Assembly (NCBI GenBank): GCA_053919585.1
Contig: CM132798.1
Length of the DNA stretch: 64,000 nucleotides
Strand: one strand, 5' to 3'
Source: Euprymna scolopes
Lineage: Eukaryota
How positions within the stretch are numbered: position 1 is the first letter of the stretch; the number at the start of each line of letters is the position of its first letter. Below the pieces are notes generated by a model. That model was not told the origin of the DNA, made no database searches, and saw nothing but the letters and a program-made list of their open reading frames with translations. Made by a program: the position numbers and the translations under genes. Of this stretch, positions 59,153 to 60,349 are shown in pieces.

Positions 59153-60349
59153 GGATTTATTTGCTTCCCCACTGAGCAAATTAGGCACAGGGCCGTTTTT
59201 TAATGTGGAGATAGGGGGAGGGAAAGGGGGACCAGCTCCCGAGAGGAGGGAAATGGGAGCTGGATTAGAAACTGTTGGTATGAAGTGTTGCCCTTTTCAG
59301 TGACCAAGGTCAGATATTTATTTGCTTCCCCACTGAGCAAATTAGGAACAAGGCCGTTTTTTAATGTGGAGAGAGTGGGAGGGGGGAGGGAAAGGGGGAT
59401 CCAGCTCCCGAGAGGTGGGAAATGGGAGCTGGATTAGTAACTGTGGTCTGTAGGGTGATTCCTACGTTGACCAAGTTCAGATATGTGGGGTTACGCCCAC
59501 ATATGGTCTTTGCTAGTCATAGCTAGTATTTGCTTGCAGCATCTGTCGGAACAGATGGTATTTATTTGCTCCCCCACTGAGCAAATTAGGCACAAGGCCG
59601 TTTTTAATGTGAGGTAAAAACCAGCTCCCCTTAAAGTAGGCAAAAAGGGGGCACTCTGGTTACCAAAAAAAATAATTGTCCCAGTATAGAGGGTTTCCCC
59701 TCCATTGACTGGTACAAATTATCTTAAGTGCAGCATCTGTCGGAACAGATGGTATTTATTTGCTCCCCCACTGAGCAAATTAGGCACAAGGCCGTTTTTA
59801 ATGTGAGGTAAAAACCAGCTCCCCTAAAAGTAGGCAAAAAGGGGTCACTCTGGTTACCAAAAATAATAATTGTCCCAGTATAGAGGGTTTCCCCTCCATT
59901 GACTGGTACAAATTATCTTAAGTGTAGTATCTGCCGGAACAGATGGTATTTATTTGCTCCCCCACTGAGCAAATTAGGCACAAGGCCGTTTTTAATGTGA
60001 GGTAAAAACCAGCTCCCCTAAAAGGGGTCACTGTGGTTACCAAAAATAATAATTGTCCCAGTATAGAGGGTTTCCCCTCCATTGACTGGTACAAATTATC
60101 TTAAGTGCAGTATCTGCCGGAACAGATGGTATTTATTTGCTCCCCCACTGAGCAAATTAGGCACAAGGCCGTTTTTAATGTGAGGTAAAAACCAGCTCCC
60201 CTAAAAGGGGTCACTCTGGTTACCAAAAATAATAATTGTCCCAGTATAGAGGGTTTCCCCTCCATTGACTGGTACAAATTATCTTAAGTGCAGCATCTGC
60301 CGGAACAGATACTACACTTTGATCTTGTCCCCCGTACCACGGAGGGCCC
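59153..60349 (-). mobile_element. TSD-flanked non-coding tandem array of six structured units with a U2 snRNA-derived leader
   Basis: 18-bp TSD ccctaactataatctgtg at 59135-59152 and 60350-60367. Units start (plus strand) at 59155, 59316, 59560, 59754, 59948 and 60131 and share a ~50-bp box atttatttgctYccccactgagcaaattaggMacaRggccgtttttaatgtg. Confidence 0.93.
60303..60326 (-). ncRNA. U2 snRNA fragment (about nt 23-46, branch-site recognition region); not a full gene
   Basis: Minus strand AAGATCAAAGTGTAGTATCTGTTC equals the invertebrate U2 sequence as recalled, including GUAGUA. Confidence 0.85.

What the first reader, a model, noticed from the sequence alone, without database searches (positions are those of the whole stretch)
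59546..60349. U2 snRNA leader and unit junctions that regenerate the U2 target site: candidate non-autonomous U2-targeted retroelement
Seen (minus strand): GGGCCCUCCGUGGUACGGGGGAC (a hairpin), then AAGAUCAAAGUGUAGUA^UCUGUUC (24 nt of U2), then unit 6. Each of the next four junctions reads ...GCAAAUAAAUACCA^UCUGUUC-CG, so a unit ends in an AAUAAA-containing tail and the next begins with the U2 sequence that follows GUAGUA. Known: the Keno (Tx1 clade) and Utopia (RLE) non-LTR retrotransposons insert site-specifically in U2 genes at about this position (exact base recalled, needs checking), and R2 has short non-autonomous SIDE parasites. Inference: these ~190-nt units are SINE/SIDE-like parasites of a U2-specific retrotransposon. 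They would be transcribed from a U2 promoter, and because their 5' end rebuilds the target, repeated insertion makes an array.
Basis: partly seen in the sequence, partly recalled or inferred. Interest (0 to 1): 0.92.

Follow-up and report, generated by a model that had tools for sequence, protein, structure and literature searches.

The report
U2-headed SINE array, Keno-type partner
This stretch is one retroposed copy of a very abundant, young family of short non-coding retroposons in a mollusc genome; the family carries a piece of U2 snRNA, which is the landing site of its partner LINE, at its 5' end, and this probably explains why units pile up head-to-tail.

Summary
On the minus strand, a hairpin and 24 nt identical to this species' own U2 snRNA (nt 23-46) lead four units of 183-194 nt. 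Each unit is joined ...AAATAAATACCA|TCTGTTCC.

Two more units follow, and the whole 1.2-kb array (59153-60349) sits between 18-bp target-site duplications inside a decayed LINE reverse-transcriptase gene. It is therefore a retroposed copy, not a U2 gene.

The family is very large: about 54,000 such junctions genome-wide, and 2,727 sites where U2-like nt ~10-46 is fused to the unit start.

The real U2 genes form a 764-bp tandem array that holds intact 7.1-7.6 kb two-ORF LINEs with an APE endonuclease, RT and zf-RVT domain (Keno-like, not Utopia). Their 3' ends share motifs with the units' 3' box.

Unit junctions lie exactly where the literature places the Keno/Utopia 3' junction in U2. TCTGTTC is repeated at each junction like a 7-bp duplication. 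Units also sit inside the U2-derived heads of other retroposons, with the host sequence resuming at TCTGTTCTT.

Best reading: a SINEU-like, Keno-dependent non-autonomous retroposon whose head is a portable target, so new units home next to the leader.

Transcription from a U2 promoter is not supported, the exact partner LINE was not found, and homing is not proven against template jumping.

The parts
60350..60367 (-). Upstream copy of the 18-bp target-site duplication CACAGATTATAGTTAGGG
   Evidence: an identical 18-mer directly flanks both ends of the array
60327..60349 (-). 5' leader, subfamily-specific GC-rich hairpin (stem CCUCCG/CGGGGG). It stands where U2 stem-loop I would be. Other subfamilies carry plain U2 nt ~5-22 here.
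   Evidence: fold; leader variants, including CTTGGCCTTTTGGCTAAG
60303..60326 (-). 24 nt identical to this genome's U2 snRNA nt 23-46. GTAGTA ends at 60310 and TCTGTTC is 60309-60303. The same 24 bp is duplicated by the U2-resident LINE K1 on insertion.
60127..60309 (-). Unit 1 (A type, 183 nt). Starts TCTGTTCCGGCAGATGCTGCAC and ends in the 3' box ...GGCCTTGTGCCTAATTTGCTCAGTGGGGGAGCAAATAAATACCA.
59944..60126 (-). Unit 2 (A type, 183 nt, 98.9% identical to unit 1)
59750..59943 (-). Unit 3 (A' type, 194 nt, with an 11-nt insertion TTTGCCTACTT)
59556..59749 (-). Unit 4 (A' type, 194 nt)
59316..59555 (-). Unit 5 (B type, 240 nt). It has the same 22-nt start, a body resembling the terminal 3' UTR module of Keno-like LINEs, and a tail of the GGGGAAGC class.
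59153..59315 (-). Unit 6 (C type). It is 5'-truncated at ATCTGACC and joined directly to unit 5's AAATAAAT. It is the array-terminal unit, with a GGGGAAGC-class tail ending AAATAAAT+CC.
59135..59152 (-). Downstream copy of the 18-bp target-site duplication
58852..59134 (+). Host sequence: a fragment of a decayed non-LTR reverse-transcriptase ORF, interrupted by the array. It continues beyond 60368.
   Evidence: RVT_1 E=7e-5, below the Pfam cut-off

Best explanation
Window 59153-60349 (minus strand) is a single retroposed insertion. It belongs to a very abundant, recently active family of short non-coding retroposons in a roughly 5.9-Gb mollusc genome.

Each element has two parts. The 5' head derives from U2 snRNA; here it is a diverged hairpin followed by an exact copy of U2 nt 23-46. 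The body ends in a 3' box: GGCCTTGTGCCTAATTT, then a 7-bp hairpin, then AAATAAAT(ACCA). That box is built like, and partly identical to, the 3' ends of intact APE+RT LINEs that live in this genome's U2 gene array. By their behaviour these LINEs are Keno-like members of the L1/Tx1 group.

Inferred mechanism. The partner LINE's machinery recognises the 3' box and nicks U2-like DNA at GTAGTA|TCTGTTC. This is the published Keno/Utopia 3' junction. The second nick falls after TCTGTTC.

Every element carries that site in its own head, so every copy is a portable landing pad. A new copy primes at the nick. Its 5' junction is then resolved within the shared head sequence, so only the part from TCTGTTC onward is added. 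A 7-bp TCTGTTC repeat is left at each junction.

Repeated homing builds the pattern 'one leader + n units'. Seeding at unrelated sites, or later re-transposition of a composite, gives whole-array TSDs of 9-22 bp such as the 18-bp one here. Local unequal exchange further amplifies some arrays.

Shown: the structure, the TSDs, the U2 identity, the abundance, the U2-resident LINEs, the shared 3' motifs, and filled versus uninterrupted heads. Inferred: which LINE mobilises the units, the order of events, and how the RNA is transcribed.
For: (1) The 24-mer equals the species' own U2 nt 23-46. It is the same 24 bp that LINE K1 duplicates in a real U2 gene.
(2) Published work states that the U2 sequence downstream of Utopia starts at nt 39 and that Keno's 3' flank is identical (PMC4640811). 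That position is TCTGTTC, exactly where every unit junction lies.
(3) The genuine U2 array (764-bp period, G000:C9, about 168.87-168.97 Mb) holds 7.1-7.6 kb elements with two intact ORFs. ORF2 has Exo_endo_phos + RVT_1 + zf-RVT and ORF1 has a zinc knuckle. Their 5' junction falls right after TCTGTTC.
(4) Units share significant local similarity with these LINEs' terminal 3' UTR: the 17-mer GGCCTTGTGCCTAATTT with K1, and a 22/23-nt match to CTAGCCTAGGACTAGCAAAGACC in a K2-type copy. Scores are z = 6-7 against dinucleotide shuffles.
(5) The family is genome-wide: 54,047 junctions GGAGCAAATAAATACCA|TCTGTTCC (reversed-pattern control 0) and 2,727 sites with U2 nt ~10-46 fused to CGGCAGAT. Copies are 97-100% identical.
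(6) Each dispersed array has its own TSD of 9-22 bp. Single-unit copies of leader + A with TSDs show that leader and unit move as one RNA.
(7) Homing. Units sit at the GTAGTA|TCTGTTC site inside the U2-derived heads of other retroposons, and the host resumes at TCTGTTCTT. L055 shows this in a K1-like LINE head. L060, L062, L063, L067, L012, L024, L030, L056, L058, L065 and L069 show it in other U2-headed SINE types. Uninterrupted copies of the same K1-like head exist elsewhere.
(8) There are two tail classes. GGGGGAGC tails are followed by (ACCA)TCTGTT in 125 of 140 cases, whereas GGGGAAGC tails are array-terminal in 25 of 27. When a GGGGGAGC-tailed unit ends an array at a non-U2 site, the flank starts TCT in 5 of 6 cases.
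Against: - No unit was seen inside a genuine U2 gene, and no master copy behind a U2 promoter was found.
- No LINE with the identical tail was found.
- Clade membership (Tx1/Keno) was not tested by phylogeny.
- Dispersed insertion sites are not U2-like overall, so at least the seeding step is not site-specific.
- Some junctions are non-canonical, for example this window's unit 5|6 junction AAATAAAT|ATCTGACC, and chimeric units occur (L007). These fit template switching better than homing.
- 'Host resumes after the units' cannot be strictly told apart from 'the host type is simply the last unit of an array'. The LINE-head case is the exception.
- There is no clear age gradient from the leader outward (L002).
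- PolyA RNA-seq shows reads on both strands and no defined transcript ends.
Confidence: 0.7

Rival explanations
1. One-step assembly. Each array is made in a single target-primed reverse-transcription event. Either the RT jumps serially from near the 5' end of one unit RNA to the 3' end of the next, or a multi-unit read-through transcript of a master array is copied. No later homing is involved.
For: - The whole array has one TSD.
- The terminal unit is usually of a distinct tail class that could be the only one able to start at generic sites.
- Junctions occur at non-canonical points, and chimeric units exist, such as the A/D/C chimera in L007 and the window's unit 5|6 junction.
- TSDs starting TCT after ACCA suggest the template RNA continues into a next unit (UCUGUUC).
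- Template jumping was already invoked for SINEU 5' additions (PMC4494074).
Against: - It needs unit RNAs that begin exactly at UCUGUUC, or a very precise jump point, about 54,000 times.
- It does not explain why the jump point is the published Keno/Utopia nick site, nor why TCTGTTC behaves as a 7-bp duplication (8 bp in L057, where host and units share the 8th base).
- It does not explain units lying inside a 7-kb LINE's head, with that head also found uninterrupted elsewhere.
- Array compositions are combinatorially diverse, which argues against a few master arrays.
Confidence: 0.25
2. Satellite-type amplification. One leader+unit was inserted, and the rest of the array arose by unequal crossing-over or replication slippage at the locus.
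For: - L068 has at least 7 adjacent units sharing a private variant, TCTGTTCTGCAG.
- L057 has 5 near-identical B' units.
- C1:19.35 Mb shows arrays longer than 10 kb with a higher-order period of about 1.64 kb.
- In the window, units 1-2 and units 3-4 are similar pairs.
Against: - The window array mixes four unit types (A, A', B, C) that differ by 6-7% or are unrelated in their bodies.
- The same types recur in different orders at other loci.
- This mechanism cannot create the first heterologous junctions. It is best seen as a secondary contributor.
Confidence: 0.1
3. The array sits in a U2 gene (or pseudogene) at the Utopia/Keno site and is transcribed from that gene's promoter.
For: A U2 24-mer precedes the first unit. 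Genuine U2 genes in this genome do carry LINE insertions.
Against: - Upstream of the 24-mer there is a non-U2 hairpin, then an 18-bp TSD, then LINE RT coding sequence, with no U2 nt 1-22 and no U2 upstream region.
- After the last unit the TSD follows, not TTATCAG.
- Rfam U2 scores 18.3 bits against a gathering threshold of 46.
Confidence: 0.03

Closest known systems
SINEU (SINEU-1/2/3 of crocodilians; Kojima 2015, PMC4494074)
   Same: Both are short non-coding retroposons whose 5' head derives from U2 (or U1) snRNA and lacks an internal pol III promoter. Both are thought to be mobilised by Tx1-group LINEs related to Keno, and some partner LINEs carry U2 heads too. Tandem copies are frequent, and transcription is unexplained.
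   Different: - The phylum differs: mollusc versus crocodilians. The paper found none outside crocodilians.
- There is no poly(A) tail; the element ends in a structured 3' box, ...AAATAAAT(ACCA).
- The head retains the exact U2 target site, and units are joined precisely at it. Crocodilian SINEU and Tx1-Mar instead prefer a Mariner transposon.
- It is far more abundant (about 54,000 junctions versus about 10,000 copies) and very young (97-100% identity).
- No sequence homology with crocodilian SINEU was tested.
Keno (U2-specific Tx1-clade LINE; Kojima & Fujiwara 2004, as cited in PMC4640811 and PMC4494074)
   Same: APE-type two-ORF LINEs sit inside U2 snRNA genes. The unit junction before TCTGTTC equals the published Keno 3' flank (U2 nt 39).
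   Different: - The two U2-resident LINE families seen here have other 3' junctions: K1 before nt 23 with a 24-bp TSD, and K2 before nt 1 with its own U2 head.
- The K2-type family is highly abundant and mostly outside U2 genes (25,769 candidate ORF2 matches).
- The finding itself is a non-coding derivative, not the LINE.
- Clade placement was not tested by phylogeny.
Utopia (U2-specific RLE-type non-LTR elements; PMC4640811)
   Same: The target nucleotide in U2 is the same. Occasional tandem insertion occurs. Some lineages have weakened specificity and insert at U2-like motifs.
   Different: Utopia encodes a restriction-like endonuclease. The U2-resident LINEs found here carry an APE-type endonuclease. 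The presence of Utopia in this genome was not examined.
SIDE elements of R2 and other non-autonomous partners of site-specific LINEs
   Same: Both are short parasites that share the LINE's 3' end and its target site.
   Different: SIDEs stay in the rDNA target. This family carries the target with it and has spread genome-wide. This comparison rests on my general knowledge and was not checked here.

Membership tests
SINEU (snRNA-headed SINE) | 5' head derived from U1 or U2 snRNA | tested here: met
   24/24 nt identical to the genome's own U2 nt 23-46. 2,727 sites carry U2 nt ~10-46 fused to the unit start.
SINEU (snRNA-headed SINE) | Short (<500 bp) non-coding retroposon dispersed with target-site duplications | tested here: met
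   Single-unit copies of about 203-217 bp with TSDs of 14-22 bp (L014, L022, L025). No ORF in the units.
SINEU (snRNA-headed SINE) | 3' poly(A) tail (stated for all SINEU groups in PMC4494074) | tested here: not met
   Copies end in ...AGCAAATAAAT plus ACCA, CC, AAA or CCAAA, with no poly(A).
SINEU (snRNA-headed SINE) | Sequence relationship to crocodilian SINEU-1/2/3 | not testable with these tools
   No Repbase sequences were available. Independent origin is likely given the phylum and the different tail.
Non-autonomous derivative of a Keno-type (Tx1-group, U2-specific) LINE | 3' junction abuts U2 sequence starting at nt 39 (TCTGTTC) | tested here: met
   All four A-unit junctions in the window; 125 of 140 GGGGGAGC-class tails in the sampled loci; 54,047 genome-wide. 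The target is a U2-derived head, not a genuine U2 gene.
Non-autonomous derivative of a Keno-type (Tx1-group, U2-specific) LINE | Shares its 3' end with an autonomous LINE that occupies U2 genes | tested here: inconclusive
   A 17-mer and a 22/23-nt block are shared, and the layout is the same (C-rich tract, GGCCTTGTGCCTAA, hairpin, AAATA...). Scores are z = 6-7. No LINE with the identical tail was found.
Non-autonomous derivative of a Keno-type (Tx1-group, U2-specific) LINE | Partner LINE has an APE endonuclease + RT and belongs to the Tx1 clade | tested here: inconclusive
   Exo_endo_phos + RVT_1 + zf-RVT in ORF2, and a zinc knuckle in ORF1 of K1 (no Pfam match in ORF1 of K2).
Utopia (RLE-type U2-specific LINE) dependent element | Partner encodes a PD-(D/E)xK restriction-like endonuclease | tested here: not met
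   Both LINE families found in the U2 array carry APE-type endonucleases. A dedicated search for Utopia was not run.
U2 spliceosomal RNA gene (Rfam RF00004) | Reaches the family's gathering score | tested here: not met
   18.3 bits against 46, E = 0.89. No Rfam family reaches its gathering score anywhere in the window.

The most novel reading that the evidence does not exclude
A LINE/SINE system has escaped its dependence on a low-copy target gene by carrying the target with it. The U2-derived head of every copy, SINE and LINE alike, is a portable landing site. The elements therefore seed self-extending arrays anywhere in the genome (about 54,000 unit junctions; 7-kb LINE tandems) and are still active. 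The head also forms a 13-bp RNA hairpin with the unit's start. Recurrent A/G polymorphism opposite U in that hairpin could be ADAR editing fixed by retrotransposition.
Probability: 0.4. Interest if true: 0.75.

Novelty: new variant of a known kind. Interest (0 to 1): 0.6.

Why it matters
snRNA-headed SINEs have been described only in crocodilians. How a LINE that targets a low-copy gene such as U2 can persist is an open question raised in the Utopia paper.

This genome offers a young, very abundant and probably active example in a mollusc. In it the target site itself has become part of the mobile element. That would explain three things: survival of a U2-specific lineage, its genome-wide spread, and the origin of SINE-derived tandem arrays or satellites.

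It also matters for annotation. Standard pipelines report almost no SINEs in decapodiform cephalopods (PMC8967140). A family without a tRNA, 7SL or 5S head would be missed.

Tried and rejected
- Searching the genome with Rfam U2 (RF00004) failed three times with a tool error. The U2 genes were found with a 22-nt pattern instead.
- I looked for a self-cleaving ribozyme at unit junctions. Rfam, run at permissive E-values over 58500-61000, gave only a sub-threshold U2 hit and two chance lncRNA hits.
- I tested whether the A-unit body descends from the 3' part of U2. CTTAA, ATGGAGGG and ATTTTTGG are collinear, but the alignment is not significant (p = 0.15 against dinucleotide shuffles). This stays open.
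- I tested whether dispersed insertion sites resemble the U2 target. They do not overall (10 sites; only the window's site at p = 0.08 and L005 at p = 0.04).
- The exact autonomous partner was not found. K1 and K2 3' ends are related but not identical, a dispersed K2-type copy has yet another tail, and a guessed LINE/unit bridging pattern hit only internal unit repeats.
- PolyA RNA-seq reads and contigs cover the family on both strands, with many alternative leaders and no sharp 5' or 3' ends at junctions. This neither shows nor excludes a dedicated transcript.
Two relatives at about 60% identity from other assemblies have a similar 3' layout but lie at other targets and have no U2 sequence.
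- Earlier notes of this scan returned nothing.
- Literature searches found no snRNA-headed SINE reported outside crocodilians and none in molluscs within the searchable library.
- The tail hairpin is almost invariant in the sample, so covariation support is limited to two variants seen by eye: GCTG/CAGC and GCTT/AAGC.

Full report
**What is in the window**

A GC-rich hairpin lies at 60349-60327. It is followed by AAGATCAAAGTGTAGTATCTGTTC at 60326-60303. Four units of 183, 183, 194 and 194 nt follow. Their junctions all read ...AGCAAATAAATACCA|TCTGTTCC, at 60127/60126, 59944/59943, 59750/59749 and 59556/59555.

TRF reports period 183, 3.6 copies and 95% matches. The 24-mer occurs once, with none expected by chance. 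The core of the 3' box occurs six times, also with none expected.

A 240-nt B unit (59316-59555) and a 5'-truncated C unit (59153-59315) follow, each ending in the same box. The whole 1.2-kb block is bounded by a perfect 18-bp direct repeat, CACAGATTATAGTTAGGG (60367-60350 and 59152-59135).

The flanks read through on the plus strand as a decayed reverse-transcriptase ORF. The array is therefore one retroposed insertion into an old LINE fragment. It is not a U2 gene.

**The U2 match is real**

The genome's U2 genes were located with a 22-nt pattern. They form a tandem array of 764-bp repeats on contig C9 at about 168.87-168.97 Mb. The U2 sequence read from it has an extra A (GATCAAAGTG).

In the usual numbering, GTAGTA|TCTGTTC is nt 38|39. 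The Utopia paper states that U2 sequence downstream of Utopia insertions starts at nt 39, and that Keno's 3' flank is identical (PMC4640811). Every unit junction in the window therefore lies at the published Keno/Utopia junction.

Rfam's U2 model aligns leader plus unit 1 end to end, but at only 18.3 bits against a gathering score of 46. Nothing in the window passes any Rfam gathering score.

**The family**

Leader plus unit 1 finds at least 664 candidate copies. The best 40 are 94-100% identical and lie on many chromosomes.

Genome-wide there are 54,047 junctions GGAGCAAATAAATACCA|TCTGTTCC with at most one mismatch, against 0 for the reversed control. There are also 2,727 sites where U2 nt ~10-46 (CGGCCTTTTGGCTAAG...TCTGTTC) is fused to the unit start CGGCAGAT. 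In many subfamilies the leader is thus plainly the U2 5' region. The window's hairpin is a diverged variant standing in the place of U2 stem-loop I.

In 45 sampled loci, arrays have very diverse compositions: A, A', B, B', C, D and other unit types. Each dispersed array has its own TSD of 9-22 bp. Single-unit copies of leader + A with TSDs (L014, L022, L025) show that leader and unit travel as one RNA.

Dispersed target sites are not U2-like overall.

**The autonomous elements**

Gaps in the periodicity of the U2 array turned out to be insertions of 7.1-7.6 kb. I call the two families K1 (in L051) and K2 (in L052 and L053).

Both have two intact ORFs. ORF2 carries Exo_endo_phos, RVT_1 and zf-RVT domains, and K1's ORF1 has a zinc knuckle. 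They are APE-type LINEs of the L1/Tx1 kind. By behaviour they match what the literature calls Keno, and they are not the RLE-type Utopia. I could not run an RT phylogeny.

In both families the 5' junction follows TCTGTTC directly. K2 carries its own U2 head (a GGTC variant), and its 3' end ...CTAAATAC(A/C) abuts U2 nt 1.

K2-type ORF2 has 25,769 candidate matches. Many are intact and up to 100% identical. Most lie outside the U2 array, and some sit in about 7-kb tandems.

The terminal 3' UTRs of these LINEs have the same layout as the units' box: a C-rich tract, GGCC(T)TGTGCCTAA, a hairpin, then AAATA.... They also share exact blocks with the units. One is the 17-mer GGCCTTGTGCCTAATTT, shared with K1. 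The other is 22 of 23 nt around GACTAGCAAAGACC, shared with a K2-type copy. Both score z = 6-7 against shuffles.

No LINE with the identical tail was found.

**How the arrays probably form**

TCTGTTC stands at every junction, just as a 7-bp target-site duplication would. This matches the LINEs' own 5' junction after TCTGTTC. In L057 the duplication is 8 bp, because host and units share the next base.

Units also lie at GTAGTA|TCTGTTC inside the U2-derived heads of other retroposons, with the host continuing at TCTGTTCTT.... The clearest case is L055. There an A and a B' unit sit between AGATCAAAGTGTAGTA and TCTGTTCTTATCAGTTACGAAAC, which is the 5' end of a K1-like LINE. The same head occurs uninterrupted at two other loci. 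Similar cases involve other U2-headed SINE types (L060, L062, L063, L067, L012, L024, L030, L056, L058, L065, L069).

Tails fall into two classes. GGGGGAGC tails are followed by (ACCA)TCTGTT in 125 of 140 cases. GGGGAAGC tails are array-terminal in 25 of 27 cases. When a GGGGGAGC-tailed unit ends an array at a non-U2 site, the flank begins TCT in five of six cases.

I therefore favour homing. The head is a portable copy of the LINE's target. New copies prime at the nick before TCTGTTC. The 5' junction is resolved within the shared head, so no second leader is added. Arrays are seeded at generic sites, usually by a GGGGAAGC-tailed unit.

The window's array would then be a seed (leader, B, truncated C) that later received two A' units and two A units.

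**What argues otherwise**

- The window's unit 5|6 junction (AAATAAAT|ATCTGACC) is non-canonical, and chimeric units such as the one in L007 exist. These look like template switching.
- TSDs that begin TCT suggest templates that read through into a following unit.
- There is no clear age gradient from the leader outward (L002).
- Some arrays are obviously amplified locally: L068 and L057, and a roughly 1.64-kb higher-order repeat at C1:19.35 Mb.

One-step assembly and unequal exchange are therefore kept as rivals, or more likely as contributors.

**Transcription is unexplained**

There is no U2 promoter at this locus. I saw no unit in a genuine U2 gene. PolyA RNA-seq shows reads on both strands without defined ends.

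**Comparison with known systems**

The closest described kind is SINEU of crocodilians: U1/U2-headed SINEs linked to Keno-related Tx1 LINEs, often in tandem, and reported as absent outside crocodilians (PMC4494074).

This family shares the defining snRNA head and the Tx1-type association. It differs in four ways:

- it lacks the poly(A) tail;
- it keeps the exact U2 target and joins units precisely there;
- it lives in a mollusc (RNA runs holding the sequence are labelled mollusc; the 5.9 Gb genome size and at least 46 large contigs suggest a decapod cephalopod, which is an inference);
- it is far more abundant and younger.

A cephalopod repeat survey reports almost no SINEs in decapodiforms but an expanded L1-Tx1 (PMC8967140). 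This family has probably gone unrecognised. I rate it a new variant of a known kind.

**Verdict**

It is right about a non-autonomous element tied to a U2-targeting LINE, about the junction, and about the regenerated target. It is wrong or unproven about the U2-gene location, the U2 promoter and Utopia.

Interest is moderate to high for transposon biology.

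Noticed in passing
window 60288-60322 (-), and all sampled units: The U2-derived AGUGUAGUAUCUG pairs with the unit's CAGAUGCUGCACU in a 13-bp hairpin with loop UUCCGG. The whole leader+unit folds at z = -5.9. Across 188 units only two positions of the 3' arm vary, both A/G opposite U (90 A / 97 G, and 9 A / 176 G). 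The all-A form is the perfect complement. This could reflect RNA-structure constraint, A-to-I editing captured by retrotransposition, or shuffling through target-derived sequence.
   Followed up: partly
L052:905-8054 (-), L053; G000:C9:168.92-168.97 Mb: LINE family K2 carries its own U2 nt 1-46 head (GGTC variant), and its 3' end abuts U2 nt 1 of the next gene. U2 nt 1-8 (ATCGCTTC) and the nt 38-45-equivalent site (ATCTGTTC) share the pattern A|TCNNTTC, and K2 ends ...AAATACC(A) like the ACCA-ending units. K2 may therefore be the partner of that tail class.
   Followed up: partly
G000:C4:62.475-62.490 Mb, C18:80.427-80.443 Mb, C46:98.082-98.091 Mb, C19:152.71-152.75 Mb: K2-type LINEs with intact 1149-1151-aa ORF2 occur in head-to-tail tandems spaced about 7 kb apart, far from the U2 array. 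One junction I read (L054) had no U2 head.
   Followed up: partly
L051 and L052 3' UTRs; L054:630-690: Both U2-resident LINE families have an internal poly(A) tract of about 30-75 nt inside the 3' UTR, followed by a terminal module of 350-400 nt that holds the box. It looks as if a tail module was added behind an older poly(A) end. B and C units resemble this module.
   Followed up: no
L008 oriented 2403-2944: A further non-autonomous type (D) has the tail ...GGCCTTGTGCCACATTTTGCTGATGTGGGCAGCAAATAAATA. It is inserted into a B unit with an imperfect 16-bp duplication, CCCCACAT(A/G)TCTGA(C/A)C. Its hairpin GCTG/CAGC is a compensatory variant of the usual GCTC/GAGC.
   Followed up: partly
window 60190-60245 (-): The A unit contains an Sm-site-like AUUAUUAUUUUUGG between two stem-loops, and an unrelated unit type (F) keeps AUUUUUAUUUUUG. 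Rfam aligns this to the U2 Sm site, but homology of the body to U2 is not significant (p = 0.15).
   Followed up: partly
G000:C1:19,349,000-19,361,500: An array of units longer than 10 kb shows a higher-order period of about 1.64 kb. Here the SINE family has turned into a satellite-like repeat.
   Followed up: no
L070, L071 (other public assemblies): LINEs with about 60% ORF2 identity have the same 3' UTR layout (CTAGCTAGCAAGAACC, C-rich tract, hairpin, AAATAAC) but no U2 sequence. L070 is flanked on both sides by ACCTGTGAACTGCGTGTCTT, which suggests a relative with a different specific target.
   Followed up: partly
leaders in L009, L013, L019, L020, L026-L028: Full-length leaders begin about 65-70 nt upstream of the junction with (A)CAGGCC-NNNN-GGCC plus a C-run, that is, a second small hairpin with variable loops. 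The origin of this extension, and of the boundary exactly at U2 nt 22/23 (also K1's 3' junction), is unexplained.
   Followed up: no
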